A stretch of DNA of 64,000 nt from Guillardia theta CCMP2712 (taxonomy: Eukaryota; Protista; Cryptophyta): positions 479,741 through 543,740 of the forward strand of contig NW_005434656.1 of the NCBI RefSeq assembly GCF_000315625.1. The letters run 5' to 3'. The notes beneath the pieces were generated by a model, which did not search any database, was not told where the DNA came from, and worked only from the letters and a program-made list of their open reading frames with translations. Every line of letters begins with the position of its first letter. The first letter of the stretch is position 1. The position numbers were made by a program, and so were the translations under genes. Shown piece by piece: positions 1 to 52,651 of this stretch.

Positions 1-266
1 GCAGAGAACTGGCTCTTTGACCACGACAGCTCCACGCCCGAATCACTCGACTGGCAAGGCAGCGTCAAAAATGCACGAGAAGCGAACATAAATAATCCAA
101 GCATTGAACAAGTCTTCCTTGCCTTAGAACTACTTAGCAAGCTACATCTGGTACTGCAGCTGATTTGACGGCTAACTCCATCTGTTGGTCTGCACTTGCT
201 CCTGGATGTTGTCTCTCTCAAAGTCATTTGATTAATCATTCGTGTAATCTTTCTTATTCCTGTCAT

Positions 267-267
267 G

Positions 268-323
<56 letters not shown>
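267..323. repeat. (CCTCGT)n microsatellite
   Basis: About 9 tandem hexamer copies read directly. Confidence 0.95.
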
Positions 324-324
<1 letters not shown>

Positions 325-669
325 ATCCTCATTCTCACCTTTGCCACCAGTACTTCGAACATTTTGCTTCTCGTCTATTTCCGGAAGCAGCACAGAAGAG
401 GAAAACAGGGTACGGGTAGGGTGGTAGCTTTACCTCTGAAAGTAGGGGTATTTTATGCTATGAGTCAGTGTCATATTGGGGGTAGGGGTACAAAACTTTT
501 GGGTCAGACTAGAAGAGTAGGGGTAGTACGTAAATCGTGTAGGGAACAGGGGTAGTAGATCTGGGTGGGGTAGTAGAACAAGTGGAGCCGGGAGGGGATG
601 AGGTCCATCTAACGGCTAAGAGCGAACGATGAGGAACGAGAACAGAGGGGGAGGGGAGAAGAAGAGGAT

Positions 670-817
<148 letters not shown>

Positions 818-1129
818 ATCAGAAGCAGAAGCAGATGAAGAAGGAGCAGGAGAAGGAGAAGAAGAAAATGAGAGGAGAGAAAAGGTGCTGAAAAACTACA
901 AGGAAAGGAGGGAAGGAGAGAAGTAGCTGAGAAATCTTGAGAGAACGTAAAAATGACGAAGAACAGGGAGAGACTAGGGCTCGAGAAAGACAAGGAATCG
1001 AAGGCATCAAACAGCAAAATGTATTCTGAGTGCCCAAAAATGCACGGAAGTGACATAACAATGGCAATGAGAAGATGAGGCTGAGCTATCATCGACTTCA
1101 AGGCTTGTCTGATGCTTCTTGCAGTTAGG

Positions 1130-1705
1130 ATGTCTTTCTTCGGCATCACGACTTTGGGTCCGCCCAACATCTTTCAACTCTACAGGCACCAGGAGATCTC
1201 CGCCATCTCCAAAGAAGACTTCTTCGTCGCCTTTCGCATGGTTGCAGGAGGAGCTGGCACCATCACCAAGGATCAGATCAAAGACGTCATGCATGAGGTC
1301 GGCGCTCCCACAGAGGGTGAAGACTTCGACAAGTTCTCCTCCTTCTTCGACAACCATGACGCCTTCAACCTTGAGAGCTTCGAGGATGCGCTCGACGACT
1401 TCATGGCCAACAACCCCACCAAGCCAGCCAAGCAGTATGTGTCGTCTTCTAAGCTTAAGGAGGACAGGCTCAAGCACAAGCGATGCGAGGGATCCTCCGC
1501 CCAAAAGTACCACGTGCCCCTCACGTCCTCACAAGAGTACGGCTGGGGGAACCCAACCGACAACATCAAGCGAGCCCTTCCTCCTTGCGGTAAGATGTTC
1601 GCTCACCGACCATCGCACATGTCCTACTATGCCGAGTGCATGATCTGCTATGAGGAAGGACGAGACTTGTCTGCTGGGCCCACCTTGAAGGCCATGGAGC
1701 TATGA
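1130..1705 (+). CDS. TEX49/SPMIP11-like ciliary microtubule inner protein with inserted EF-hand-like segment
   Basis: N-terminus MSFFGITTLG and C-terminal YHVPLTSSQEYGW...SHMSYYAE resemble TEX49/SPMIP-type motifs. The central ITKDQIKDVM...FNLESFEDAL segment is EF-hand-like. Single open exon. Confidence 0.65.
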   Translation: MSFFGITTLGPPNIFQLYRHQEISAISKEDFFVAFRMVAGGAGTITKDQIKDVMHEVGAPTEGEDFDKFSSFFDNHDAFNLESFEDALDDFMANNPTKPAKQYVSSSKLKEDRLKHKRCEGSSAQKYHVPLTSSQEYGWGNPTDNIKRALPPCGKMFAHRPSHMSYYAECMICYEEGRDLSAGPTLKAMEL

Positions 1706-1774
1706 GAGGGGTCTCAGTTGGATCTTCGCGTCCTCTTCTCTCTTTATTGTCTAAGCAGGATGTGTCTGGTAACC

Positions 1775-4700
1775 TCATTTCGTCACTTGCCCCTGGGCCG
1801 TGCTTCGTCGAGCTCGCACACGCGCAAGAGCAGACGTGAGGGCGGGCTGGGCGACCATGGCCGCGTCCTGCTCGTTCATGGGAGCCTGCAAGATCGTGAG
1901 TGCAGGCAGGAGATGACAAGCTGATTGCCTTGGGCTCGATCTGCTGCTTCTTCTTGTCTGCTCGCTTGAGCTCCTCAACTTCAGTCTTGAGCCTCATGAT
2001 TTCAACCTTTTCATCATATCAATAAACTGTAAAGCCACAGCAGGTTGGCTGCTCAACCTGGTATTTCCGCTCTTCGATCTGCTGGATGTTTCTCAGCTCC
2101 ATGTCCAGCTTCATCACTTTCGTCTCCAAGTCATCGCGCTCCCTGTTGCTCCGATCAACCAGCATCACTCAGGGAAGAGGGTGAACCTCTTGAGCTCGTC
2201 ACGTTCAGACATGACAGGCTTCATCTGCTCCTTGTGTGAGTTGAGATCTTGTTCCTTCTTCTTCAGCTCATCGTCCTGCGGCGAGTGAGGCAGAACCAAC
2301 AAAACCTTTCTCATCGACCTTGACTTTGAGCATCTTTCTCAAAGTGTCAAGATCTGCCTTGCAAGCCTCCATCTCCTTGGACAGTCGTTCCTTGTCCGCT
2401 GACAGCTTTGTGAACTCCTTCTGCTTTGAATCTGAAACACAATCAGGGCAGCAGCCCGGGTGGAGGAGGTGGGAAGCGGGCGGTAAGAGAGAAGAAGACA
2501 CACCTGTCATCACTCCCTCGGAGAAGGCCTTCTTCAAGTCAGACTTGCACTTCACCAATTCCTCCTCCAGCTGCGACAGATTCAAGTCATTCACGTGAGG
2601 GTTTGCCATCCCTCTACTCGCCTTCTTCTTGTCCGCATCGAACTTGGCTCTCTCGGTTTCGCGCTCTCGCTGTACCTCCGCCTACACCAAGTGTGAGGTT
2701 CTGAATACATGCTCTGGATAGAATACCAGCGCACTCTGATTCTGTGACTTTTGAGACTCCAAGTCTCGTTTGTAGAGGTCTTTGGATATCATATTCTCCA
2801 TGAGTTTCTTCTTTTCGGACAACTCCTCCTTCAGCTGAGCAAGCTCTCGACGATCCCACTCTTCCTGCTTCTCGGAGCGCAATCGAGTCATCTGATGTTC
2901 ACCCTTCTCGTCACTCAACTCTTTCTGAGTTTGCTGCAGTTGCTCTTTCAATCCTTTGATTTGCGAGGACAAGTTTTCCTTCTCTTCGTGCAATCTTGTT
3001 TTGTTCTCTTGCAGAGACGAGTTGATGCGCTGTTCGTTGGCCTTCAAGCTTTCAATCCTCTCGTTCAAAACTTTGTTTTCCGTGAGCTTGGCGTTAATCT
3101 CCTCTTTGAGATTACGAATCTTTTCTTCCGACTTGACCCTCAAGTCTTCATATCTCGCCTTCGCCTCGTCTCGTTCCTTTGTCATTCTCGCTTCGTCTTC
3201 TGTCTTGATATTCTGGATCTTGACTCGCGCTTCAGAGAGCTCGGCTTCTTTCGTCTGCTCCAACTCTCGCAAGACGGTTTCTCTCTCCTTCAATTGCTTC
3301 TCCAAGTTGTCAATGTGTGACTTGAGCAGAGCCCTTTCGGTCTCGTGGTCTTTGGTGGTCATGATCTTCTCGTTTTCAAGTCTCTTGACTTCGTTCTTCA
3401 TGTCTTCAAGCTCAATCTGTTTGAGCCACTTAGCCATAAATAACAAACGCAAGAATCGTTACCTGAAGCTCTTTTTGTCTCTCATCGTTCAACCTTTGCA
3501 GCTCCTTGCGCTCGGTCTCGGCCTTATCTTGGTAAGCAGCTGTCAAAAAAGTGTCAAGAATCAAATAGACTGAATGTAGAAAATCGACCATATTTTGAAC
3601 TCAAGTCAGAAATCTGTGCCGTGTGTTTCTCTTGCGCCTTCGCCATGTCGTCCTTGAGCATCTCATTCTGGGACACGGGAAAAAATGAACAACTCTGGAT
3701 TGATCAAAAACTTCGATTTCACCTTGGCCATGGTTGCGCTCAGGTCTTGTTCAAGCTGTTTCATCTTGGCTTCAACATCCGTGCGATACTCTTTCATTTC
3801 TTTTGTATGTCTTGCTTCAAGGTACTCTTTCTCTTCCTTGTAACTCGCTTTCAACTCTACCAACTGCTTCTCGATGACCTCGTTCCTTGAGGAAAGACCT
3901 TCGTTTGTCTTTGTCAAATCAGCCTCCATCTATCATGATCATCATCAAAATTTCATCATTCATAACGACTCGCACGCTCACAAACCTTGTAATAATTCTT
4001 CTCAAGCTCATTGAATTTGGCAGTGAGTTCCTTTTCTTTTTCATCCATTTCAGCTTTGAGCTGCTGCTCCAATTCATCCATCGCTGTTTCATACTCCTTG
4101 AGCGTCTCGTCAAGTTCAATCTGCTTTTGATCACGCTCCTCCATGGCATCTTTGACTTGATTCTCCAATGACTTAATGCGAAGATTTAAAACTTCCTTCT
4201 CGGTCTCAAACCCGTTCTTCATTTCCACCTGAGATCTTTCACTTGCAGCATTGATCTCTTCAATCTTCCTCTTGTGCTTGTCTTCGATCTCCTTCTGCGC
4301 CTGTTTCCATCTAGCCTCTTTTTCTTGAATATCTTGCTCCGTTCCTCCACGTACCGCTTCAAGCTCTTTGGTCAAGTTCTCAATCTCATCGGCTTGTTGC
4401 GCATTTTTTTCATTCAAATCTGCAATCTGACTGTTGAGCTCATTCTTGAGATGATCAAGAGAAGTTGATTTCTCATCGAAGCCTTTTCTGATGCCATCGA
4501 GTTCGTCAGTCTTCTGCTGGAGTTGCGTCAGCAAGTCTCGTTCCTTGGCTTGCTTTTCCTGGCTTATCTGTGTCAATTGCTTTCCGAGCTCTTCCAGTTG
4601 TTTTCTTTGCTTTGATCTTTTTCTTCAGTGCTTGCCAAAGAGCGTTGGAGCTGGTCTAATTCAACAGAGAGTTTCTTGACCTTCTCATCATATTCTTTGC

Positions 4701-7160
4701 AGTCACGTTTGACCTGCTGTAACTGACCTTCCAGTCTCTGCTTCTCCTCCTGACTGACAAGCACCTGATTGCTCAAATTGGTCTTGTCATGAGAAAGGTC
4801 ATCAATCTTGGATTTCAAAGCTTCGATGTCTCTGACGAGCTGCTCGTTTTCAGCCTTTGCTTTTTGCCCTCCAATCTTTTCGAGTTCGTCCTTCTGCTGC
4901 TTCAGCTCTGTACACAATGCCTTATTCTCCTCCAGTTCTACGGAGAGCTTCTTCAGCATTTCTGACATTTGAACTCCAAGAGCAGCATGCTTTGTTTTCC
5001 ATTCCTGAGCCTCTTCAGAAGCACGATCCAGCTGTTCAGTGAGTTGCTGGAGGCTGCTGCTTGTTTGCTTCTTCTCCATTTCGAATCTTTCTTGAAGGGC
5101 TTTTGCCTCAGATTCAGCATCTTTCTTGGCATTTTCCAAAAGTCTTCGAAGATCTGCCTCTCGGCTCCTGAGAATCAAGTCACCTTGAAAGATTGGTCAT
5201 CATCTAGGGTGTGATCTTACTGGGACTCGGCGGCATTTCTCTTTGCGAACTCTTTCTCTTGCTCGAGCAAAGCAGTCTGCATCTCTTGATCTTTTTTGAA
5301 TTGCAGCAATTGTTGTTCAAATTGCTGAGCTTCCATTTGTGCTTTCTGTCGCTTTTCTTCCAAGGCATTGACCTGCGCTTTCAGTTCCGCCTCCGCCTTT
5401 GCCCTCAATTCCTTCATTGCCTCTTCATGAGTAGACCTAAGTCTCTGCATCTCCTCCTTGTTCTCTTTCTCCCTGCTTTTTGCATCTTCGTTATACTTCT
5501 CAGCAAATTCCAGCTTGAGCTTGAGATTCTTCAGGTTGTTGTCGCTTTCCATCTTCAAGGCCGAGAGTTCTTTGGCCATCTCATCTACCTGAACTTTCGA
5601 ATCTGCCTTCACCTTTTGAATCTCTCGTTCTGATCTGTTGCCAAATCTTAATCCAACCTCTGCCAATTTTTGTTCCATGAAGCTAGAAAGAACTTCTTGT
5701 TTAGCAGGTCCATTCGGTACCTATGCTATTGAGTTAGAAGTGGCAAAAATCGAGCATCATCCACCTCCTCCAGATACTTGGAGCGAACTGTTTTCCTCTC
5801 TGATTCAAATTCTTCAAAAGCAGAAAACTCATCAGATTGTACTTTCGCGTCAACGTCCTTGTACAGCTTTTCAAGAATCTCCTTAGCGCGGTCGCGTCCA
5901 CGAGCGGAATTCTCATTCTGCAGCAATCTATGCAACTCACGGATCTTGTCTTCGAGTTGATGTTTAAAATTTTCGGTATCAGATCCGATTGCATGCTTCT
6001 GGAATAGAGCCCACGACTGTTTTTCCATTGCTCGGTGCTTGTGTTCTAGGTCTTCCATGCTCAACGGCAATTCGTTGGCAATCATTTCCTTGGATTGCTT
6101 GTCATATGATGATATGGCATCATTGAGAGCTTGTTGACACTTGCTTTCACAGATGTAACTCCAGGCATTCTGAATAGAAGGAACACTTCCAGTGTTGATA
6201 GACATGGTGTACGCATATGCTAGGTTCACAAGCGCGACTCCGTCGAGTTCGGTTCCATTCATTTTCTTCGGTTTGGCACAAGAGACGATCGTCTTTCGAA
6301 GAGTAAGCATTTGCTCACGAAATTCCGGTCTCAACTGGTCGGACGGGGTTTGAGAGAGTCTCTGAAGGAGGGATTCATCAGTAACAGGGCGCACCATCGT
6401 AAAACAATCTCTGTCCGGGAAAAAGTGTGTAAGCATCCTTCTGATTCTGTTCTTTGCCTCAATCTGCTCCGTAAATCCTGGAACTGGCTGCAGGGCCCGC
6501 TCAAGATATTCTTTAGCCGAGAAGGGCTGGCCATCGTGGTTCACCAGCTGCAAAGTGAAGTCGCGAACTAGCCACATGAATGAAGGGAAGTATTGAGCGA
6601 AGTCTGCACCATCATCCTCCCCACCCTGTGCGGAACTCCTAACATGAATGTGCTTGGTAAGGTTAACTACGAGGGAAAGATTGTTCAGAGCTCCCTCATC
6701 GATGGAACCAACACTGTTATATACAAAGTAAGACGACAACAGCAAAGCCAGGGAGAAAATGATTGAATCATGCTGGCTGTTAGTGTCTAAGGCCCCAATG
6801 CCCTCAGTGTCGATGATGAGGTAGTTGACTGTGTTTCCGTCTTTGTCTTGGGTCTTCATCACACGGTTCCAAAGCCATAACCCCTTCGTGCAGGGATTCA
6901 CAGTGGGACCAACTTGAAAACCATCTGATTGTTCAAGCAAGATTCTGTTGAGCAAAAAGCTCTTGCCAGTACGGTAGAGACCGACGACTGCTATGACAGA
7001 GACGGGATATTCAATCTGAAGCAAAGTCAAAAATAAAAAAAGTGAGCTCAAAATGAATCGGAAATCTCACTGATTTCAAGAATTCCGCAGCTTCTTCTGT
7101 GACGTTAAATTTGCCGTCCTGAAGAGCGATGAACGGAATCGCCTTGCCTTCCGTAGGCAT
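1775..7160 (-). CDS. Guanylate-binding protein (GBP/atlastin family) GTPase with very long C-terminal coiled coil, multi-exon
   Basis: G1 GLYRTGKSFLLN, G2 TKGLW, G3 DTEG, G4 RDF in ORF 5726-7051; start MPTEGKAIPFI at 7160. E/K/Q-rich heptad exons (5217-5678, 4573-5178, 3956-4576, 2682-3452, etc.) can be joined by short introns down to a stop at 1775. Confidence 0.85.
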
Positions 7161-23529: not shown

Positions 23530-23895
23530 TGGCCCGGGCCGGCCCGGCCGGCCGGGCACTTGAATGCCGACTCTCAAGTCACTGAGTGGTCGGACCGTCC
23601 TGGACCCGGGCCCGGTCCCGGTCCGGCGGCCGCCGGGCCGTGTGTGCCACGGCCCGGTCTCTTTTTACTACCCGGTCATCCCTATCAACCGTGCGACGGT
23701 GGCGTATGATCGGAGACAAGTTGCCAACGGTGAGTTGTGTGCAGCGGCCGAGTACGGACGGTCCGGGCCGCCGGTGATCGGATGATGGCATCGGATCAGT
23801 CGGAGCAGTGCGATCTCGTGCGGTACCGTGCTCCTGTGCCCGGGCCGCCTCCCTCTGTCCGCTGCTGGCGGCCCGGCGGTCCCCCGGGCAGCGCG
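23530..23895. other. GC-rich island flanking the left side of the retrotransposon nest
   Basis: CCGG/GGCC/GATC-rich with no credible ORF. Confidence 0.65.
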
Positions 23896-25010
23896 TCCCC
23901 TTCTGCTGCTTGTTACCCCTCAGGCTCCGACGTAGCCACTGTTGCTTGGCCCAGATCAATCAAACAAATTGTGGCTGGGATGAGAGGCCTAAACTTGCCA
24001 ACCGTTGAACTTGACTTGCGGCCGCAGTAAAGAGAGAGCCTGATTGAAGAGAGGAGTCATCCGAATGTGTAAGGCTTGATAGAATTGCATGAATTTTCAA
24101 CTGCAACCGGAAACGGCGGTCACGGGTACTCCTCGCTAGCCTCCGAGTCAGCGGTAGCCGAGTCAGCGGTAGCCGCCCGTGACGGCGGCGACGCCGCGGC
24201 AATGCCCAAGGACCGGCGTGACCCGACCGATGCCGGGGAGGAAGCAGGCGAGCTCGGACCAGCGGCAAGCACCCCAGTGGTGTCGAGCTCTCCGGAGGCA
24301 CCTGACGTCACAGTGAGGGACGGAGACGCCTCGCCAGCTCCGCGCCGATCGTCGGCGCCACTCGACGTGTTTCCCCCATCGGAGTCGGAGACCTCCGGCG
24401 AAGACTCCCCCTCGGGCGACTCGACAAAGTCCGAGGAGGAGCTGTCCTCTGGCTCGAGAAGTGCTTGCGCCTGCAAGGGCGTCATGCGCCTCGCACCAGA
24501 CAAGAGCGCCTCCAGCGTCAGCTGCATGGTGAGGCGCTGATAGGTGGCGGCGCGTTTGCGAGCCAGGACCTCAGCAGCAGGGCCGTCATCAGGCACGAAG
24601 TGCCGACCAAACGCCGCATCCTCAAGAGGCATCGAGCGCTGAGCAATGATGTCCGCGAGATACCAGATGAAGCGGAGGGTGTCAGGATGCAGGGTACCGT
24701 CCGTCGAGATGGCAAGAGGGATGAACGCTCGAGGAGGAGTAGTCATAGCATATGCAGCGCGATGTTTGCGAATCTTCTCAGACGCTGCAGCATGGAGGGC
24801 GTCGAGGTTGACCTCCCCCCACTTGGTCAGGTCGGCAGAGCTACCAATGTAAGGGTGGACCAACGTCACGTCCGCCATCAAGCCCTCGTACTGCTCGGAC
24901 CCTCGATCGCGGATTCCAGGAATGTGGATATCGCCCTTCATCTTGCGGCCGTGACTCAGTGAGGATGGGAGGGTACCTGCCGTCGAGAACGAGGATCCCC
25001 CACTGTATCG

Positions 25011-25571
25011 TACCCTCCGTCCGCTGCCCCAGGCGGACCCCCGGGCAGCGCCGGCTCCTTGTCGGCGGCTGCCCTTTCTCCGTCCGCGGCCGCCCGCTTT
25101 GTGGCGGCAGCGGACGTCTCGACTGACAGTGGTCAGTCGGCTGCCTCCGGGTATCGCGTCTAAGGGATTTTCTTCCTCATGCATGCTCCTGCTGCTTGTT
25201 GCTTGATTGCTTGACCCTTAGGCTGCTTGTCTGCGCGGCTTCGCGCTTGGGCTGGCGATGCCGCGTCTGGGTGCCAGCAGTGCTGGTTCTTTTCGGGCTT
25301 GTGTTTTGTGTGTGTTTGTGCAGCTTCTCGCTGTGGTGCCAGCAGTGCTGGTTCTTTTCGGGCTTGTGTTTTGTGTGTGTTTGTGCAGCTTCTCGCTGTG
25401 GACTGTGTACCTGCCGGTTCAGCTTGTTCCTGCTTTGTTTTGCTTGAGGCACTTTTTACCTTCTGCGAGTAAATCCTATAAAGTCGCTGTGGACTGTGTG
25501 CCTGGAGGTTTAGCTTGTTCCTGCTTTGTTTTGCTTGAGGCACTTTTTACCTTCTGCCAGTAAATCCTACA
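25011..25571 (+). mobile_element. 5'-truncated copy B (ORF end + 3' UTR, two tandem 3' ends) inserted antisense into copy A
   Basis: TSD CCCCCACTGTATCG (24997-25010) / CCCCCCCTGTATCG (25572-25585); ends TAAATCCTATA at 25480 and TAAATCCTACA at 25571. Confidence 0.9.
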
Positions 25572-26779
25572 CCCCCCCTGTATCGATGACGCTCTGAAGA
25601 CCAGCTTCGTTCAGCATCGACCGAATCGTACGAGTAAGGTTGTCATGCGCCGTGGGAAGCTTGGAGGATCGGCCGCCCGGCGTTTGCAGGTCTGGAGATG
25701 ATGTGCAGCAACGGAGGGATCGAGCTCGCGCTGACATCCATCACATTCCGTCGGACACTGGCAGATCGGCATGCCATGGAGATAGCAGTCGAGCATCTGA
25801 GCATAGCGGTGCGGGAAGGCCTTGAGGGGGTAGTAGCTCGAGACTCGCATCGGAGAGTGGCTCAGGTCTCGCTCAGGAAAATGAGCGAAGATGGTAGACT
25901 GCAAGACCCTATCCTGCGACTTGAGCGAGTGTGTCCTGCGGCTGTGCAAGGTGAGGATATCACGCTGCTGATCGGTCAGCGCAGCGCGAGCATGCACATG
26001 GCGAGGGAAGACGCGCATGACAAGAGGAGTCACATTTCGCTGCGCAGGGGGAGGAATGAAGTGCTCATGAGACGAGTCGACGAGAGCGCGCAAACCAGGG
26101 ATGTGTACCACAGATGCCGGGGGGCGTCCTGCATCATCAGGCACAGCAGCCGGGGCAGGTGGGATCGCCGCACCATCTGCAGCCGGTGCAGGAGCCTTGA
26201 CACGACGGTAGAGGATCGCTCCAGCATTATGAACGAAGTCGTGCGCCTCAACGAAGAAGGTCGCCAGAGGATGCTTCTGGGCACGGAGAGATCTCGAGCA
26301 GTGAACGTCCAGGCTATGAGGAGAGGGCAAGGTCCGTGACATGGGCTGGTCAGAGTACCAAGCGAGGAAGCGAGCGATAGCCGTATAGTAAACAGCGGGG
26401 TGTAGACCCTCAGAGGGCGTGAACTCGTCCCCTCCCCGACTATGCGGAAGCTCCCGCTTGAACCTCGCAAACTCTAGCAGGTCGGGATGCGCGGCAAGGT
26501 ACTGCGAGGAAGGCCAGCGGTGGTATTTCTCAAGCGCCAGGTGGACAGAGAGGTCAAAGCGACGAATCTGTGATTGGACCCGCGGGAGAAACGGAGAAGA
26601 CCCCTGGAGGAAGAAGCGCAGCTTCTGAAGATGGCTCGCCCTCACCAGCGTCTTGAACATGAAGCCATGCTGGACGAGCCCGAGCTTCGAGAGCTCTTCG
26701 TTGAGGGTAGAAACCTTCGCTCGGAGCTGACTAGCATGAAATCCATCCGTGCCGATAGGCAGGCCGCCACTTGAAGTGT

Positions 26780-28110
26780 AATCCCGCCAGTGACGACCTC
26801 GAAGTGAAGAAGTTGAGTCTTGAGACGGCGCTTAAGGCTCTTCTTCAGCTGCGAGAGATCAGGGTGTTGATGCCAGGAGGGGATGTAAACTTTCGACTCG
26901 CGAGGTTGAATCTCTAGCTTCAGATCAGCTAACATGTACTTCTTCATAGCGGACGTAGCTGCAACGGCATCCTCGAGTGGACCGACAAGCACGACGTTGT
27001 CAGCATAGGCCAAGACTCGAACAGAGGGAAAAAGCTCTGCGATATGGAGGAGCAGGGGGTGGATACTGTGGCAGAAAAATACGCTGGAGGGGACATCGCC
27101 CTGACAGACGCCCGAGGTACACTGAACGGAGGCTGACTGACTTTTGTGAAAGAGTCGAAGGTCAGCAGAGTCTCCATAGTAGCTGGAGAGGTAGGAGGCG
27201 AACAATCGGAGATGCTCGCAAGAGGGCAAGCTTGCGCCTTCAGTGATGCTCCCATCAAAGTAGTCGCGACTCGCACGTCCCTCGATTGCATCGAAGAGAG
27301 CCTGGCGGTCGAGGGAGTTGAAGGCGTTCTTTGCATCCAAACTCACCAGCACTGTGGGGTTGGCAACATCCTCATCATCACCGCGAGCGTGAAGGGGCAG
27401 GAGCGCTGACGCGGTTTGCGAGAACTTCAGACAGCCGTCTCGATCGAGTCCGAACTGAATCGCTCGAGGGTGAGACGAGAGGAAGTGCTGGTCAAGAAAT
27501 GAGCGAATCGCTGCCAAAGCAAGCTTCGTCGCGAGTCGACGGTGTGCAGAACCGATGACAATTGGCCGGAGACCAGGTTTATCAGCTCCCTTGGAGAGGG
27601 GAATAAATCTGCCTCCTCGACGAATGGCTGACAGGGCAGGAATAAGAAGATCCGGCATTTGGCCAAGAAGGACCCCTTGGAGGATATGTTTGCAGTAGAG
27701 CTTCAAAGCTGCAGGATGACTAGAAAGGGGTGACAGGTGTTGCCGAATCCTCCACCCTTGGTCATCGGTCCCCGCAAAGGAGCTGTAGCGCTTGATCGCC
27801 TGGATCAGGCTAGTGGTGTCGAGGATGTCAGTCAAATCCACCTGCAGTACTGCAAGCGCTTGCTGGGTGAGATGATCCGCGGAAGCACTTCCAAAGGCAG
27901 GCGACGCACCATCAGGGAACTTCTCTTGTGCTTCAGCAAGAAGATCAGCGAAAGATTCAGCCCTGTAGATGCCGGAGCTCAGTAGTGTCCGTACCGCCCG
28001 ATGAAGGTCACCCGCAGTGAACTGATGAATCGCCAACTGTCTTTGGCGCTCGCTCGCAGAGGTGAGGGACAGCGTAGGTCGCGGCGGAGGAGCAGGCTCA
28101 GACTCCTGAG
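26780..28110 (-). pseudogene. Reverse transcriptase domain of the CRE-like element
   Basis: Core of ORF 26642-28336. A 5-bp insertion near 26770 shifts the frame; the copy at 30960-31030 reads GGITLGGLPIG without it. Confidence 0.85.
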
Positions 28111-28117
28111 ACGATAG

Positions 28118-29613
28118 ATAGGATTTACTGGCAGAAGATAAAAAGTGCCTCAAGCAAAACAAAGCAGGAACAAGCTGAACCGGCAGGTACACAGTCCACA
28201 GCGAGAAGCTGCACAAACACACACAAAACACAAGCCCGAAAAGAACCAGCACTGCTGGCACCCAGACGCGGCATCGCCAGCCCAAGCGAGAAGCCGCGCA
28301 GACAAGCAGCCTAAGGGTCAAGCAATCAAGCAACAAGCAGCAGGAGCATGCAGGAGGAATAAAATCCCTTACACGCGATACCCGGAGGCAGCCGACTGAC
28401 CACTGTCAGTCGAGACGTCCGCTGCCGCCACAAAGCGGGCGGCCGCGGACGGAGAAAGGGCAGCCGCCGACAAGGAGCCGGCGCTGCCCGGGTGTCCGCC
28501 TGGGGCAGCGGACGGAGGGAGGCTGGACACAGGAACACGGTACCGCTCGAGGTAGTCCTCCTCGCTAGCCTCCGAGTCAGCGGTAGCCAAGTCAGTGGTA
28601 GCCGCCCGTGACGGCGGCGACGCCGCGGCAATGCCCAAGGACCGGCGTGACCCGACCGATGCCGGGGAGGAAGCAGGCGAGCTCGGACCAGCAGCAAGCA
28701 CCCCAGTGGTGTCGAGCTCTCCGGAGGCACCCGACGTCACAGTGAGGGACGGAGACGCCTCGCCAGCTCCGCGCCGATCGTCGGGGCCACTCGAAGGGTG
28801 TCCCCCATCGGAGTCGGAGACCTCCGGCGAAGACTCCTCGGGCGACTCGACAAAGTCCGAGGAGGAGCTGTCCTCTGGCTCGAGAAGTGCTTGTGCCCGC
28901 AAGGGCGTCATGCGCCTCGCACCAGACAAGAGCGCATCCAGCGTCAGCTGCATGGTGAGGCGCTGATAGGTGGCGGCGCGTTTGCGAGCCAAGACCTCAG
29001 CAGCAGGGCCGTCATCAGGCACGAAGTGCCGACCAAACGCCGCATCCTCAAGAGGCATCGAGCGCTGAGCAATGAATAGGATATAGGATTTACTGGCAGA
29101 AGATAAAAAGTGCCTCAAGCAAAACAAAGCAGGAACAAGCGGAACCGGCAGGTACAATGATGTCCGCCAGATACCAGATGAAGCGGAGGGTGTCAGGATG
29201 CAGGGTACCGTCCGTCGAGATGGCAAGAGGGATGAACGCTCGAGGAGGAGTAGTCATGGCATATGCAGCGCGAGGTTTGCGAATCTTCTCAGACGCTGCA
29301 GCATGGAGGGCGTCGAGGTTGACCTCCCCCCACTTGGTCAGGTCGGCAGAGCTACCGATGTAAGGGTGGACCAACGTCACGTCCGCCATCAAGCCCTCGT
29401 ACTGCTCGGACCCTCGATCGCGGATTCCAGGGATGTGGATATCGCCCTTCATATCCAGTAAATCCTATATCTTGCGGCCATGAGGATGGGAGGGTACCTG
29501 CCGTCGAGAACGAGGATCCCCCACTGTATCGATGACACTCTGAAGACCAGCTTCGTTCAGCATCGACCGAATCGTACGAGTAAGGTTGTCATGCGCCGTG
29601 GGAAGCTTGGAGG
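28118..29613 (-). mobile_element. 5'-truncated copy C (RLE + tail + 3' UTR) containing inserts at 29076-29154 and 29453-29469
   Basis: Begins ATAGGATTTACTGG (reverse complement of the 3' end); near-identical to copy A over the shared region. Confidence 0.9.
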
Positions 29614-29618
29614 GAACC

Positions 29619-30637
29619 TCTCGACGGACGGTACCCTGCATCCTGACACCCTCCGCTTCATCTGGTATCTCGCGGACATCATTGCTCAGCGCTCAATGCC
29701 TCTTGAGGATGCGGCGTTTGGTCGGCACTTCGTGCCTGATGACGGCCCTGCTGCTGAGGTCTTGGCTCGCAAACGCGCCGCCACCTATCAGCGCCTCACC
29801 ATGCAGCTGACGCTGGAAGCGCTCTTGTCTGGTGCCAGGCGCATGACGCCCTTGCGGGCGCAAGCACTTCTCGAGCCAGAGGACAGCTCCTACTCGGACT
29901 TTGTCGAGTCGCCCGAGGAGTCTTCGCCGGAGGTCTCCGACTCCGATGGGGGACACCCTTCGAGTGGCCCCGACGATCGGCGCGGAGCTGGCGAGGCGTC
30001 TCCGTCCCTCACTGTGACGTCGGGTGCCTCCGGAGAGCTCGACACCACTGGGGTGCTTGCCGCTGGTCCGAGCTCGCCTGCTTCCTCCCCGGCATCGGTC
30101 GGGTCACGCCGGTCCTTGGGCATTGCCGCGGCGTCGCCGCCGTCACGGGCGGCTACCACTGACTTGGCTACCGCTGACTCGGAGGCTAGCGAGGAGGACT
30201 ACCTCGAGCGGTACCGTGTTCCTGTGTCCAGCCTCCCTCCGTCCGCTGCCCCAGGCGGACCCCCGGGCAACGCCGGCTCCTTGTCGGCGGCTGCCCTTTC
30301 TCCGTCCGCGGCCGCCCGCTTTGTGGCGGCAGCGGACGTCTCGACTGACAGTGGTCAGTCGGCTGCCTCCGGGTATCGCGTCTAAGGGATTTTCTTCCTC
30401 CTGCATGCTCCTGCTGCTTGTTGCTGGATTGCTTGACCCTTAGGCTGCTTGTCTGCGCGGCTTCGCGCTTGGGCTGGCGATGCCGCGTCTGGGTGCCAGC
30501 AGTGCTGGTTCTTTTCGGGCTTGTGTTTTGTGTGTGATTGTGCAGCTTCTCGCTGTGGACTGTGTACCTGCCGGTTCAGCTTGTTCCTGCTTTGTTTTGC
30601 TTGAGGCACTTTTTACCTTCTGCCAGTAAATCCTATA
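29619..30637 (+). mobile_element. 5'-truncated copy E, inverted relative to C
   Basis: STDGTLHPD...SGYRV* followed by a 3' UTR ending CAGTAAATCCTATA. Confidence 0.9.
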
Positions 30638-30641
30638 CTAT

Positions 30642-31124
30642 GCGGGGTGTAGACCCTCAGAGGGCGTGAACTCGTCCCCTCCCCGACTATGCGGAAGCTC
30701 CCGCTTGAAGCTCGCAAACTCTAGCAGGTCGGGATGCGCGGCGAGGTACTGCGAGGAAGGCCAGCGGTGGTATTTCTCAAGCGCCAGGTGGACAGAGAGG
30801 TCAAAGCGACGAATCTGTGATTGGACCCGCGGGAGAAACGGAGATGACCCCTGGAGGAAGAAGCGCAGCTTCTGGAGATGGCTCGCCCTCACCAGCGTCT
30901 TGAACATGAAGCCATGCTGGACGAGCCCGAGCTTCGAGAGCTCTTCGTTGAGGGTAGAAACCTTCGCTCGGAGCTGACTAGCATGAAATCCATCCGTGCC
31001 GATAGGCAGGCCGCCAAGTGTAATCCCGCCAGCTTCTCGCTGTGAACTGTGTGCCTGCCGGTTCAGCTTGTTCCTGCTTTGTTTTGCTTGAGGCACTTTT
31101 TATCTTCTGCCAGTAAATCCTATA
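30642..31124. mobile_element. Internal fragment F (minus, 30642-31032) joined to 3'-end fragment G (plus, 31030-31124)
   Basis: F duplicates 26395-26790; G is the last ~95 nt of the element; CAG microhomology at the join. Confidence 0.85.
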
Positions 31125-31126
31125 CT

Positions 31127-32745
31127 TCCACCCTTACATTGGTAGCTCTGCCGACCTGACCAGACTAATGGATTACCAAGTGGGGGGAGGTCAACCTCGA
31201 CGCCCTCCATGCTGCAGCGTCTGAGAAGATTCGCAAACATCGCGCTGCATATGCCATGACTACTCCTCCTCCTCCTCGAGCGTTCATCCCTCTTGCCATC
31301 TCGACGGACGGTATAGGATTTAGACTAGAATATAGGATTTACTGGCAGAAGATAAAAAGTGCCTCAAGCAAAACAAAGCAGGAACAAGCTGAACCGGCAG
31401 GTACACAGTCCACAGCGAGAAGCTGCACAAACACACACAAAACACAAGCCCGAAAAGAACCAGCACTGCTGGCACCCAGACGCGGCATCGCCAGCCCAAG
31501 CGAGAAGCCGCGCAGACAAGCAGCCTAAGGGTCAAGCAATCAAGCAACAAGCAGCAGGAGCATGCAGGAGGAATAAAATCCCTTACACGCGATACCCGGA
31601 GGCAGCCGACTGACCACTGTCAGTCGAGACGTCCGCTGCCGCCACAAAGCGGGCGGCCGCGGACGGAGAAAGGGCAGCCGCCGACAAGGAGCCGGCGCTG
31701 CCCGGGTGTCCGCCTGGGGCAGCGGACGGAGGGAGGCTGGACACATGAACACGGTACCGCTCGAGGTAGTCCTCCTCGCTAGCCTCCGAGTCAGCGGTAG
31801 CCAAGTCAGTGGTAGCCGCCCGTGACGGCGGCGACGCCGCGGCAATGCCCAAGGACCGGCGTGACCCGACCGATGCCGGGGAGGAAGCAGGCGAGCTCGG
31901 ACCAGCAGGATTTACTGGCAGAACGTAAAAAGTGCCTCAAGCAAAACAAAGCAGGAACAAGCTGAACCGGCAGGCACACAGTTCACAGCGAGAAGCTGCA
32001 CAAACACACACAAAACACAAGCCCGAAAAGAACCAGCACTGCTGGCACCCAGACGCGGCAGCGCCAGCCCAAGCGCGAAGCCGCGCAGACAAGCAGCCTA
32101 AGGGTCAAGCAATCCAGCAACAAGCAGCAGGAGCATGCATGAGGAATAAAATCCCTTAGACGCGATACCCGGAGGCAGTACCCTGCGGTTTAGCTTGTTC
32201 CTGCTTTGTTTTGCTTGAGGCACTTTTTACCTTCTGCCAGTAAATCCTACTACCGACACCGAATCCATTGTTACCGCTGCATCCTGACACCCTCCGCTTC
32301 ATCTGGTATCTGGCGGACATCATTGCTCAGCGCTCGATGCCTCTTGAGGATGCGGCGTTTGGTCGGCACTTCGTGCCTGATGACGGACCTGCTGCTGACG
32401 CATGTGGATTTAGTGGCAGAAGGTAAAATGCGCCTCAAGCAAAACAAAGCAGGAACAAGCTAAACCTCCAGGCACACAGCGCACAGCGAGAAGCTGCACA
32501 ATCACACACAAAACACAAGCCCGAAAAGAACCAGCTTGAGGCACTTTTTACCTTCAAGGCTGCCAGTAAATCCATTGTACTACCAGCACTGCTGAGGTCT
32601 TGGCTCGCAAACGCGCTGCCACCTATCAGCACCTCACTATGCAGCTGACCCTGGAGGCGCTCTTGTCTGGTGCGAGGTGCATGACGCCCTTGCGGGAACA
32701 AGCACTTCTCGAGCCAGAGGACAGCTCCTACTCGGACTTTGTCGA
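31127..32745 (+). mobile_element. Plus-strand RLE-region copy split by nested inserts I/J (31312-32178, minus), K (32187-32250, plus) and M/N (32406-32573)
   Basis: Host pieces 31127-31313, 32178-32186, 32277-32398 and 32589-32745 are collinear; TSDs GTA, CTGC and CTGCTGA. Confidence 0.85.
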
Positions 32746-33369
32746 TGTGATATCTGCGTGACTTTGGACTAGTACAAGTCTAACAAACTTGTATTCCGTC
32801 GGTTATGAGCCTAGGCATCTCCCCTTATCTCTGCACTGCACATCTAATAGCCCTGCATGAAAATCTTCTTCAGAATGGACAATCTTTGAATGGTTATTGC
32901 CCACTCAGCATGACTGTGAACTTGACGTTGTATCGTCGTATCTTGACTTGGATCTGCTGACATTCTCTTGTTTGAGTGACTTTCTGACGTCCGATGTAAC
33001 GTACTATTTCAGAAACTCGGGGGGAGGATGGAGCGTATGCCAGCCGTGCCAGTCAGATAGCGCCGAGTTAACAAAAACTCTGTAAACCAAGACGACTTAC
33101 GTGTCAAGGCGGCAATGTAGTACGTGTGATGAAGAGGAGGCCTTCCTAGCCGTCCGGTCTTGCTAAGGTCCCCTCATGTCTGGTTGCTTGGGTTTCACAT
33201 CCTAGCATACAGTCTATCTCTCATGTGCTCCTCAATTCTGGTTTTGTGTGCATTAAACTCGGTCTTGAGCAAAAACTGTCTTGTAAACTTGTATTCCGTC
33301 ACATGCACCAGTCCAGGTGGCGCCGCCAGCCGCTGAGCTGAGTTTGCGCATATGGTAAAACTTGAAGTG

Positions 33370-33742
33370 TCTCAAGCAGCTTGAAAATGAAGCCATGCCG
33401 CACTGCTGGACGAGCCCGAGCTTCCAGACTCTGGAAGAGCGGCTCCGATCGTTGAGGTTGCCAGGAAGACCGTACCTTCGCTCGGAGGAAAACCGGGCCA
33501 TCTGTGCCGATCGGATAGGCAGGCCTCCAAGTGTAATCCCGCCAGACACGACCTTGAAGTGAAGATGCTGAGTCTTGAGACCGTGCCAGACGGCGCGGCT
33601 TAAGGCTCGTAAACTTGAAACTTTCGACTCGCGGGGTTGAGTCTCAAGCTTCGAATCAGCCCGGCCACTGAACATGACTCAGTGATGTACTTCGAGTCTG
33701 CATACTATACTATGATAGCTGAGGTAGCTGCAACGGCATCCA
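33370..33742 (-). mobile_element. Older degenerate RT-region fragment of the same family
   Basis: Aligns by eye to 26640-26972 (ETQPRESKV, VVSGGITLGGLPI) with many small insertions. Confidence 0.8.
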
Positions 33743-52551: not shown

Positions 52552-52651
52552 NNNNNNNNNNNNNNNNNNNNNNNNNNNNNNNNNNNNNNNNNNNNNNNNN
52601 NNNNNNNNNNNNNNNNNNNNNNNNNNNNNNNNNNNNNNNNNNNNNNNNNNN
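52552..52651. other. Assembly gap (100 N) within G-rich low-complexity sequence
   Basis: Run of n. Confidence 1.

What the first reader, a model, noticed from the sequence alone, without database searches (positions are those of the whole stretch)
24132..32745. Self-nesting CRE-like retrotransposon: at least 13 copies of its own 3' end written into or onto its own copies
Seen: about 8.6 kb made almost entirely of one element. The terminus ...CTGCCAGTAAATCC(TATA) occurs at 25480, 25571, 29469, 30637, 31124, 32250, 32573 (plus) and 28118, 29083, 31312, 31331, 31908, 32406 (minus). I did not notice it in the flanking genes. Inserts range from about 11-15 nt to about 1.5 kb, occur in both orientations and sit at different internal sites. 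TSDs are 14 (B), 6 (D, CAATGA), 2 (AT), 3 (GTA), 4 (CTGC) and 7 bp (CTGCTGA). Most resolvable target sites fall in the endonuclease-coding part. Known: RLE-bearing CRE-clade elements (CRE1/SLACS, Cnl1, MoTeR) typically insert at one fixed site in host repeats. Inference: this family targets its own DNA with loose sequence specificity, or patches breaks in its own chromatin with cDNA. Either would give a self-limiting sink or trap locus.
Basis: partly seen in the sequence, partly recalled or inferred. Interest (0 to 1): 0.9.

Follow-up and report, generated by a model that had tools for sequence, protein, structure and literature searches.

The report
Self-nesting retrotransposon island, candidate centromere
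This 10-kb stretch of the alga Guillardia theta is a pile of one R2-like jumping gene inserted again and again into its own copies, and because every chromosome-sized scaffold examined carries exactly one such pile, these islands are the best candidates for the organism's still unknown centromeres.

Summary
The terminus CTGCCAGTAAATCC occurs 11 times (at most 1 mismatch) in window 25463-32573 against 0.01 expected, plus two ultra-short copies, and nowhere else in the window.

The element is a non-LTR retrotransposon of Guillardia theta CCMP2712 with an RT, a CCHC motif and a C-terminal restriction-like endonuclease. Profile and fold searches hit only R2 proteins. CRE-clade membership could not be tested.

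- **Genome-wide:** there are 770 exact termini. In sampled loci, 146 of 147 had self DNA within 90 nt downstream, and the last flank is an old diverged copy.
- **Independent events:** 155 of 156 junctions are unique to one contig.
- **No target site:** there is no target motif, and site use tracks availability.
- **One island per contig:** termini sit in one 2-30 kb island per contig. This includes contigs C2, C5 and C7, which carry TTTAGGG telomeres at both ends.
- **Contrast:** related LINE families lie dispersed on the arms.

This matches Zepp/ZeppL clusters of green algae, so the "sink locus" is better read as a candidate centromere. Two earlier reports of this scan reached the same reading on other islands of this genome.

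The parts
23815..23894 (+). Degenerate old fragment of the element (76% identity to the natural reference copy) at the left edge of the island.
24126..25010 (-). Copy A, 3' portion. It covers the end of the RLE domain and the C-terminal tail coding region. It lacks the last ~440 nt of the element and forms the left border of the young island.
   Evidence: translation
25013..25480 (+). Insert B1: a 5'-truncated 3' end of ~468 nt with a 65-nt internal tandem duplication. It is nested in copy A.
25484..25571 (+). Insert B2: an 88-nt 3' end directly behind B1 (stuttered terminus). B1 and B2 together are flanked by a 14-bp target duplication in copy A.
25572..28115 (-). Copy A, 5' portion. It carries the reverse transcriptase (motif C reads YADN at 26996-27007), a CCHC motif and the start of the RLE domain. 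It is frameshifted and 5'-truncated.
28118..29075 (-). Copy C, 3' part (3' UTR plus C-terminal coding region). Its 3' terminus abuts the 5' end of copy A.
29076..29156 (-). Insert D: a ~75-81-nt 3' end with a stuttered tail, nested in copy C, with a 6-bp TSD (CAATGA).
29155..29613 (-). Copy C continued (RLE coding region). It is interrupted by a 17-18-nt micro-insert of the terminus at 29453-29469 (+).
29619..30637 (+). Copy E: a 1,019-nt 3' end, head-to-head with copy C. Its 3' terminus is joined to fragment F.
30642..31032 (-). Fragment F: an internal piece of the region between RT and RLE, 99% identical to the reference copy.
31030..31124 (+). Insert G: a 95-nt 3' end.
31127..31313 (+). Copy H, piece 1 of 3 (RLE coding region). 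Pieces 2 and 3 lie at 32272-32398 and 32589-32745.
31331..31908 (-). Insert I: a 578-nt 3' end. It is preceded at about 31305-31318 by an 11-14-nt micro-copy of the terminus.
31907..32178 (-). Insert J: a 272-nt 3' end.
32182..32250 (+). Insert K: a 68-nt 3' end. Block I+J+K sits in copy H with a 2-bp TSD.
32272..32398 (+). Copy H, piece 2.
32406..32573 (.). Double-ended insert: L (-, 130 nt) and M (+, 40 nt), with two 3' ends facing outward inside one 7-bp TSD (CTGCTGA) in copy H. An independent DNA run bridges it.
   Evidence: contig X1 record 8 covers 32527-32696 with 0 differences
32589..32745 (+). Copy H, piece 3. It is 3'-truncated and forms the right border of the young island.
33380..33660 (-). 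Degenerate old copy (70-88% identity, RT-proximal region) at the right edge of the island.
   Evidence: (D13, D14)

Best explanation
Window 23.8-33.7 kb is one of the islands, found once per chromosome, of a Guillardia theta non-LTR retrotransposon. The element has one long ORF of roughly 1,500 aa or more: an N-terminal region with a poly-Q tract, an RT, a CCHC motif, a C-terminal restriction-like endonuclease and an S/P/A-rich tail. The 3' UTR is ~250 nt and ends ...CTGCCAGTAAATCC plus about 4 nt (mostly TATA), with no poly-A.

New copies arise by target-primed reverse transcription. The RT starts at the precise RNA 3' end on a nicked target and usually aborts early, so the median insert is about 90-150 nt. 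A second, staggered nick gives TSDs of 1-20 bp (median 6).

The nick itself has no detectable sequence preference. Specificity lies at the level of the locus. Insertions land only inside one 2-30 kb region per chromosome, and that region has therefore become almost pure element DNA, so every new copy has 'self' flanks. Because there is exactly one island per chromosome, the island is most likely the centromere or tightly linked to it. The element most likely reads something peculiar to that locus, such as centromeric chromatin or a kinetochore-associated protein, rather than a DNA word.

Shown here: the anatomy, the RLE and RT identity, independent nested insertions, the one-island-per-contig distribution, near silence in RNA-seq, and an older periphery.
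Inferred: TPRT, recognition of the 3' end of its own RNA, centromere identity, and chromatin-level targeting.
For: Element identity.
- RVT_1 hit at 4.4e-7.
- The family profile hits only R2 proteins in the PDB: 9nl3_A at 5e-9, 9dou_A at 1e-8, 8gh6_A at 8e-5.
- The C-terminal 276 aa fold with pLDDT 75.8 and pTM 0.78. The 7 best Foldseek matches are all R2 retrotransposon proteins (9nl3_A, E 9e-7, TMq 0.52), followed by PD-(D/E)xK nucleases.
- H65, D109, D129 and K161 are invariant in the family alignment.

Nesting.
- There are 770 exact termini genome-wide, against 0 for the control pattern.
- 146 of 147 sampled termini have self DNA within 90 nt downstream. The exception is an old diverged copy.
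- The islands are 87-100% self DNA, apart from the 490-nt patch in L016 (78%).
- 155 of 156 junction types are confined to one contig, so they are independent events.
- 35 clean nested inserts have a median TSD of 6 bp and lengths of 24-1176 nt.
- Inserts are closer to the young reference than their hosts: 97.0% against 93.9%, Wilcoxon p = 0.0017.
- There is no target motif; information content is below 0.1 bit at every position.
- Target use tracks availability in the 3' half.

One island per chromosome.
- All 100 termini listed for contigs C1-C11 fall in one region per contig.
- Of 133 further listed termini, all but one fall in one region per contig. The exception, C21:590288, is treated in the Against line.
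- TTTAGGG arrays in outward orientation lie at both ends of C2 (1.30 Mb), C5 (1.23 Mb) and C7 (1.23 Mb). Their single islands lie at 720-726 kb, 692-706 kb and 307-318 kb.
- Related RLE-LINE families (36-47% identity) lie scattered on the arms, several per contig, and not in the islands.
- Island edges are older copies of 70-90% identity.
- The island has ~60% GC, against 52-56% in the flanks.
- RNA-seq depth is about 0-10 on the element, against 179 on the neighbouring gene.
- All of these match Zepp clusters of Coccomyxa: one nested cluster per chromosome, 1.5-42 kb, 61% against 53% GC, and no ESTs (PMC3446292). They also match ZeppL at Chlamydomonas centromeres (PMC8226300).
Against: - There is no direct evidence of centromere function. 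No CENH3, Hi-C or genetic data were available.
- Inside an island made almost wholly of the element, chromatin-directed and self-DNA-directed targeting predict the same flanks, so the targeting level is inferred only from the one-per-chromosome rule.
- Nested inserts favour the host's orientation: 26 to 9 (p = 0.006) among clean events and 90 to 52 (p = 0.002) among all termini. A purely sequence-blind process does not predict this.
- One small patch at C21:590,288 lies 57 kb from that contig's island, although it sits beside a 100-N gap.
- The census is partial.
- No fully intact ORF was seen in the sampled copies, and RNA-seq is nearly silent, so present-day activity is not shown.
- The 3' UTR shows no thermodynamic structure signal (z = -0.34).
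Confidence: 0.62

Rival explanations
1. Self-DNA homing. A DNA-binding part of the ORF recognises short words that are frequent in the element's own sequence, and the endonuclease then nicks nearby without specificity. The islands are passive 'sinks' that grow wherever a first copy landed. They may or may not be centromeres.
For: - All sampled flanks are self.
- The orientation bias of 26 to 9 and 90 to 52 toward the host's strand would follow from a strand-specific recognition word.
- Relatives in the R2 group recognise DNA through N-terminal domains (own knowledge).
Against: - No motif was found at the junctions, and there is no hot spot along the element once availability is taken into account.
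- Pfam finds no DNA-binding domain in the N-terminal ORFs.
- A passive sink does not explain exactly one island on each of the 12 largest contigs and on three contigs with both telomeres, nor the absence of a second island. Under a Poisson model with about 1 island per contig, 12 contigs each carrying exactly one has a probability near 6e-6 (own arithmetic).
Confidence: 0.22
2. Break patching. The islands are fragile, for instance through inverted repeats or replication stress. Double-strand breaks are repaired by capturing short cDNAs of the element, independently of its endonuclease.
For: - The inserts are very short, down to 11-24 nt.
- Extra untemplated nucleotides occur at the 3' junctions.
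- A few events carry target deletions of -3 to -16 bp.
- Double-ended inserts occur (window 32406-32573).
Against: - 31 of 35 clean events have a positive TSD of 1-20 bp, as staggered nicks give.
- Every insert begins at the exact RNA 3' end.
- The RLE catalytic residues are invariant across the family, which argues that the endonuclease is in use.
- Break repair would also capture other cDNAs or DNA, yet the islands are 87-100% this one element.
Confidence: 0.08
3. The structure comes from recombination or amplification, or is an assembly artefact. The mosaic arose by unequal crossing-over, gene conversion between islands, or mis-assembly of a high-copy repeat in a 2012 Sanger/454 scaffold, and not by repeated insertion.
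For: - The assembly has gaps in many islands (N runs).
- One junction is shared between the C12 and C75 islands.
- Tandem duplications occur.
- Both outer copies of the window's island are 3'-truncated, which implies some deletion or rearrangement.
Against: - 155 of 156 junctions are unique.
- The junctions carry TSDs.
- Inserts are younger than their hosts.
- An independent 2021 DNA run has a contig covering window 32527-32696 with no differences. It also shows many terminus-to-internal joints at single-copy depth.
Confidence: 0.05

Closest known systems
Zepp (Chlorella/Coccomyxa) and Zepp-like ZeppL LINEs (Chlamydomonas and relatives)
   Same: [quoted passage not shown]
- Cluster sizes from a few kb to tens of kb.
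- Higher GC than the rest of the genome.
- Virtually no transcripts.
- No satellite repeats in or beside the cluster.
- The family is absent from chromosome arms.
- The clusters are proposed as centromeres (PMC3446292; PMC8226300).
Searches show each of these here.
   Different: - Zepp and ZeppL are L1-clade LINEs with an APE-type endonuclease, two ORFs and poly-A tails. The Guillardia element has a C-terminal restriction-like endonuclease, apparently one ORF, and a defined non-poly-A terminus.
- The host belongs to a different eukaryotic supergroup (Cryptista).
- The resemblance is therefore convergent.
R2 (rDNA-specific RLE LINE; structures 9nl3, 9dou, 8gh6, 8ibw)
   Same: - The only named relatives found: the RT profile match and the fold match of the CCHC plus RLE module.
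- A precise 3' end without poly-A, variable 5' junctions and untemplated nucleotides, and frequent 5' truncation.
   Different: - R2 cuts one fixed site in 28S rDNA and has N-terminal zinc-finger and Myb DNA-binding domains. Here there is no fixed site and no motif, and no recognisable N-terminal DNA-binding domain.
- Sequence identity is very low; phmmer of the single protein finds nothing in the PDB.
- Motif C reads YADN across the family.
CRE clade (CRE1/2, SLACS, CZAR; Cnl1, MoTeR)
   Same: - An RLE-bearing LINE of a protist with one long ORF.
- Strictly confined to one kind of genomic location.
   Different: - CRE-clade elements use a fixed nucleotide target (spliced-leader genes or telomere repeats). 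This element uses any position of its own copies, in both orientations.
- Phylogenetic membership could not be tested, because no named reference was retrievable.
Centromere-specific retroelements that nest into themselves (plant CR chromoviruses, Dictyostelium DIRS-1, Drosophila G2/Jockey-3)
   Same: Retroelements enriched at, or confined to, centromeres and building nested arrays there (own knowledge; plant centromere review PMC10984392 listed).
   Different: Those are LTR, tyrosine-recombinase or APE-LINE elements. None uses an RLE, and none is described in cryptophytes.

Membership tests
RLE-bearing non-LTR retrotransposons (R2 supergroup) | A reverse transcriptase of LINE type. | tested here: met
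   - Pfam RVT_1 at 4.4e-7, 30.2 bits against a cut-off of 29.6.
- The profile of the family hits R2 proteins at 5e-9 and 1e-8.
RLE-bearing non-LTR retrotransposons (R2 supergroup) | A CCHC motif followed by a PD-(D/E)xK restriction-like endonuclease, C-terminal to the RT. | tested here: met
   - The C..C...H....C pattern and invariant H65, D109, D129 and K161 in alignment A2.
- AF2 model at pLDDT 75.8.
- The top 7 Foldseek PDB matches are all R2 proteins, followed by PD-(D/E)xK nucleases.
RLE-bearing non-LTR retrotransposons (R2 supergroup) | No apurinic-like (APE) endonuclease N-terminal to the RT. | tested here: met
   Pfam finds no Exo_endo_phos or any other domain in the N-terminal ORFs, or in the full-length relatives P0004 and P0174. 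This is absence by Pfam only.
RLE-bearing non-LTR retrotransposons (R2 supergroup) | TPRT hallmarks: a fixed 3' end, 5' truncation and short target duplications or deletions. | tested here: met
   - 770 identical termini.
- 35 clean inserts of 24-1176 nt, with TSDs from -16 to +20 bp and a median of 6.
CRE clade | Groups with CRE1/CRE2/SLACS/CZAR in an RT phylogeny. | not testable with these tools
CRE clade | Insertion at one fixed nucleotide site in a host repeat (spliced-leader gene or telomere repeat). | tested here: not met
   Targets are spread over reference positions 245-4914 of the element itself, in both orientations, with no motif.
R2 clade proper | Insertion in 28S rDNA, with N-terminal zinc-finger and Myb domains. 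| tested here: not met
   All sampled flanks are element DNA. No zinc-finger or Myb domain was found by Pfam.
Zepp / ZeppL | An L1-clade LINE with APE endonuclease and a poly-A tail. | tested here: not met
   The element has an RLE fold. Its terminus ends AAATCC plus about 4 nt, without poly-A.
Zepp / ZeppL | Nested clusters, one per chromosome, absent from the arms. | tested here: met
   The three contigs with telomeres at both ends have one island each.
Centromere | Exactly one locus per chromosome. | tested here: met
   - C1-C12 have one island each.
- C2, C5 and C7 have telomeres at both ends.
- There is one unexplained small patch at C21:590,288, beside a gap.
Centromere | Occupied by CENH3 and the kinetochore, and required for segregation. 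| not testable with these tools
   No ChIP, Hi-C or genetic data were available.

The most novel reading that the evidence does not exclude
The islands are the functional centromeres of Guillardia theta's many chromosomes of about 1 Mb. This R2-like element finds them by reading centromeric chromatin rather than a DNA sequence. That would make it the first RLE-type centromere-homing LINE. It would be a convergent counterpart of Zepp in a different eukaryotic supergroup, and a case where a normally site-specific endonuclease lineage has switched from nucleotide to epigenetic targeting.
Probability: 0.42. Interest if true: 0.82.

Novelty: new variant of a known kind. Interest (0 to 1): 0.7.

Why it matters
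Centromeres have not been described for any cryptophyte in the literature searched. Guillardia theta is the reference genome for secondary endosymbiosis.

A sequence tag that marks one locus per chromosome has three immediate uses:
- it gives testable centromere candidates;
- it gives a way to count and order chromosomes, which appear to number many and to be about 1.2-1.3 Mb each;
- it gives a starting point for artificial chromosomes or stable vectors in an alga that is hard to transform.

For transposon biology, it shows that an RLE LINE, a group known for rigid nucleotide-site specificity, can be confined to a locus without any detectable target word. This makes the question 'how does a retrotransposon recognise a centromere?' approachable in a small genome. 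It also shows that the Zepp-type architecture evolved at least twice, with different enzymatic machinery.

Tried and rejected
1. Long open frames of 1,920-2,559 aa reported by the genome search are artefacts of N-masked stretches.
2. phmmer of the single protein against the PDB gave nothing. Only the family profile reached R2.
3. Naming the clade failed. Two word-index searches, the exhaustive HMMER search, the cluster look-up and the atlas search returned only Guillardia 'hypothetical proteins' and unnamed environmental sequences. CRE, NeSL and R4 placement is therefore left open.
4. A search for a target motif at 133 junctions found nothing; information content was below 0.1 bit per position.
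5. A hot spot along the element was tested. Once the 5' half, which is biased by how the loci were sampled, is set aside, site use fits availability (chi-square about 6.3, 4 df, own arithmetic).
6. Tail-to-tail pairs of termini 5-35 nt apart looked like a sign that an existing 3' end attracts the next insertion. With about one terminus per 250 bp, about 10 such termini are expected by chance and about 14 are seen, so the idea was dropped.
7. An RNA fold of the 250-nt 3' UTR gave no signal (z = -0.34).
8. The one apparently non-self flank (L016, C75) turned out to be an old diverged copy.
9. The outlier at C21:590,288 is a 250-nt patch of element DNA beside a 100-N gap, and its flank is again self.
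11. The relative's contig L063 (P0004, 70% identity, intact 1,511-aa ORF) ends in a (TG)n run shortly after the stop codon, so it says nothing about the 3' terminus.
12. The Zepp primary papers (PMC1169995, PMC169880) are not held.

Full report
**1. Observation**

The 14-mer CTGCCAGTAAATCC, allowing one mismatch, occurs 11 times in the window. All matches lie between 25463 and 32573. The expected number is 0.01, and no shuffle reached 11. Two more ultra-short copies of the terminus are visible by eye at 29453-29469 and about 31305-31318.

BLAST of the whole 64-kb window against a natural copy of the element (L047, contig C77) finds element DNA only between 23815 and 33660.

- Copy A (-) spans 24126-25010 and 25572-28115. 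It is split by inserts B1 and B2 (25013-25571) with a 14-bp duplication.
- Copy C (-) spans 28118-29613. It carries insert D with a 6-bp duplication and a 17-nt micro-insert.
- Copy E (+) spans 29619-30637.
- Fragment F, insert G and copy H follow. H is in three pieces, split by block I-J-K (2-bp duplication) and by the double-ended block L-M (7-bp duplication).

Degenerate fragments of 70-88% identity flank the young core at 23815-23894 and 33380-33660. The only tandem repeats in or beside the island are internal duplications of the element.

**2. What the element is**

The minus-strand ORFs of copy A carry an RT (RVT_1, 4.4e-7). Downstream lies a C..C...H....C motif, followed by AHDNL, KGDIHIPG, ADVTLVH and KIRKHRAAY.

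All named homologues are 'hypothetical' or 'reverse transcriptase' proteins of Guillardia theta CCMP2712. This identifies the genome. It is 87.1 Mb in 669 contigs, and the window is C18:479741-543740.

An exhaustive HMMER search finds 709 relatives. All of the distant ones that were looked up (24-38% identity) are unnamed environmental or Logan sequences.

A profile of 12 family members hits only R2 retrotransposon proteins in the PDB: 9nl3_A at 5e-9, 9dou_A at 1e-8 and 8gh6_A at 8e-5.

An AlphaFold model of the C-terminal 276 aa has pLDDT 75.8 and pTM 0.78. Its seven best Foldseek matches are all R2 proteins, followed by other PD-(D/E)xK nucleases. H65, D109, D129 and K161 are invariant in the family.

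The element is therefore an RLE-type LINE. Whether it belongs to the CRE clade could not be tested, because no named CRE, NeSL or R4 reference could be retrieved.

The longest natural copies indicate one ORF of at least ~1,500 aa, with a variable poly-Q tract. A 70%-identical relative from another sample has an intact 1,511-aa ORF. No fully intact copy was seen among the G. theta loci sampled.

**3. Nesting is genome-wide and consists of independent events**

The exact 14-mer occurs 770 times, 380 on the + strand and 390 on the - strand. The control pattern occurs 0 times.

In 50 fetched loci plus the window:
- 146 of 147 distinct termini have element DNA within 90 nt downstream. The one exception (L016) is flanked by an old diverged copy.
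- Apart from the 490-nt patch in L016 (78%), the islands are 87-100% element DNA.
- Only 1 of 156 junction types is shared between contigs. The junctions are therefore separate insertions and not copies of a composite.

Thirty-five inserts have host DNA on both sides. Their TSDs run from -16 to +20 bp with a median of 6. Their lengths run from 24 to 1176 nt with a median of about 90.

Inserts are closer to the young reference than their hosts (97.0% against 93.9%, p = 0.0017), as nesting in time requires.

After AAATCC come about 4 nt (TATA, ACTA, ATTA, ATTG or TATG), often followed by a few untemplated bases.

No base preference is visible at the junctions; information content is below 0.1 bit per position. 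Target positions follow the availability of each part of the element. That availability rises about 20-fold toward the 3' end because of 5' truncation.

There is a significant bias toward the host's orientation: 26 to 9 among clean events and 90 to 52 among all termini. It is unexplained. Selection against close inverted repeats or a weak strand-specific preference are both possible.

**4. The decisive pattern is one island per chromosome**

All 100 termini listed for contigs C1-C11 fall in a single region per contig:
- C1 at 682-711 kb
- C2 at 723-726 kb
- C3 at 644-646 kb
- C4 at 403-416 kb
- C5 at 693-707 kb
- C6 at 672-674 kb
- C7 at 307-312 kb
- C8 at 788-793 kb
- C9 at 975-983 kb
- C10 at 558-572 kb
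- C11 at about 239 kb

Three further slices of the termini behave the same way: 100 listed of 148, all 33 of a second slice, and all 42 of a third that overlaps the first. So do the RT matches.

TTTAGGG arrays lie in outward orientation at both ends of C2 (1.30 Mb), C5 (1.23 Mb) and C7 (1.23 Mb). These contigs are complete chromosomes, and each has exactly one island.

With roughly one island per Mb, the chance that 12 contigs of about 1.1-1.3 Mb each carry exactly one is about 6e-6 under random placement (own arithmetic).

Two related RLE-LINE families of the same genome (36-47% identity) are scattered on the arms, several per contig, and avoid the islands.

The only outlier is a 250-nt patch at C21:590,288, 57 kb from that contig's island. 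It sits beside a 100-N gap, and its flank is again self.

**5. Independent data**

A 2021 DNA run has a contig covering window 32527-32696 with no differences. That contig spans the L/M/H junctions. The run also shows many joints between the terminus and various internal positions at single-copy depth. This argues against an assembly artefact.

RNA-seq raw reads give a depth of about 0-10 over the element, against 179 over the gene that starts about 300 bp to the right. The family is nearly silent under those conditions.

**6. Interpretation**

The anatomy fits target-primed reverse transcription by an R2-like enzyme. That enzyme starts at the exact 3' end of its own RNA and aborts early.

What is unusual is the level of specificity. 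There is none at the nucleotide level, and it is absolute at the locus level.

Exactly one such locus per chromosome is the signature of a centromere. The same reasoning was applied to Zepp in Coccomyxa. Zepp shares the cluster size, the GC excess (61% against 53%, compared here with about 60% against 52-56%), the lack of satellites and the transcriptional silence (PMC3446292). It was also applied to ZeppL in Chlamydomonas (PMC8226300). Those elements are L1-type LINEs with an APE endonuclease, so the resemblance is convergent.

The element either reads centromeric chromatin (preferred, because no DNA word is detectable and no second islands exist) or recognises its own DNA (not excluded; the orientation bias hints at some strand information).

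Older, decayed copies at the island edges indicate that the same loci have been targeted for a long time.

**7. Novelty**

No paper in the searchable library describes Guillardia or cryptophyte centromeres, or an RLE LINE confined to centromeres. Subscription literature and Repbase reports could not be searched.

Two earlier reports of this scan (s1-431607 and s1-436926) reached the same reading on other islands of this genome. They are not independent evidence, but their claims were re-tested here.

This report adds:
- the contigs with telomeres at both ends;
- the junction-uniqueness test;
- the TSD, length and orientation statistics;
- the insert-younger-than-host test;
- the contrast with dispersed sister families;
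- the RLE fold match;
- the read-level checks.

**8. Limits**

- The census is partial.
- The loci were chosen by similarity to young copies.
- Centromere function and present activity are not shown.
A natural copy (L047) served as the coordinate system.

Noticed in passing
window 26996-27007 (-), and alignment A1: The RT motif C reads YADN instead of the usual Y/F-A-D-D. D366 and N367 are invariant in all 12 family members, including relatives of 22-35% identity. It is unusual for an evidently mobile RT.
   Followed up: partly
G000 contigs C2, C3, C4, C5, C7: TTTAGGG telomere arrays (1,775 matches of a 4-unit pattern) lie at both ends of contigs of 1.23-1.30 Mb, so G. theta seems to have many chromosomes of about 1 Mb. 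Internal arrays also occur at C7:38209, C4:10753 and C7:10071, a few to tens of kb from the ends.
   Followed up: partly
L051-L056, e.g. G000:C19:796730-800500, C22:193553-197260, C31:85972-89679: Two sister RLE-LINE families have long open frames of 1,350-1,406 aa. One is 88-99% identical to P0174; the other is only 40-47% identical to it. Both are dispersed on chromosome arms, several per contig. Their targets were not examined.
   Followed up: partly
L047:3946-4019 (C77), and window 32439-32512: A 74-nt internal piece of the 3' UTR, lacking the terminus, is inserted in the poly-Q coding tract of an otherwise long copy. The copy on C32 lacks it. It does not look like an ordinary TPRT product.
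   Followed up: partly
L017 (C75) and L040 (C12): One terminus-plus-flank junction is identical in the islands of two different contigs. It is the only one of 156. It may reflect exchange between islands or retrotransposition of a composite transcript.
   Followed up: no
window 32816-33200: A strongly expressed gene (RNA-seq depth 29-179) begins about 100-300 bp to the right of the island, so the island is embedded in active, gene-dense DNA.
   Followed up: no
window 25270-25401 and 25393-25571: Insert B1 contains a 65-nt perfect tandem duplication inside its 3' UTR, and a 91-nt near-tandem repeat includes the terminus. Stuttered termini also occur at 29076-29099 and in L014 (t49/t50).
   Followed up: partly
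L061 = G000:C21:588788-591805: An isolated 250-nt patch of element DNA lies 57 kb from that contig's island. It consists of a 115-nt internal fragment plus a 135-nt 3' end, directly beside a 100-N gap. It may be a scaffolding error or a satellite island.
   Followed up: partly
L045:2540-2960 (C32) versus L047:3790-4230 (C77): The CAG/poly-Q tract between the N-terminal region and the RT differs greatly in length between copies, and it shifts the frame in some.
   Followed up: no
window 52552-52651: A run of 100 N, either an assembly gap or a withheld stretch, lies in the window outside the finding.
   Followed up: no
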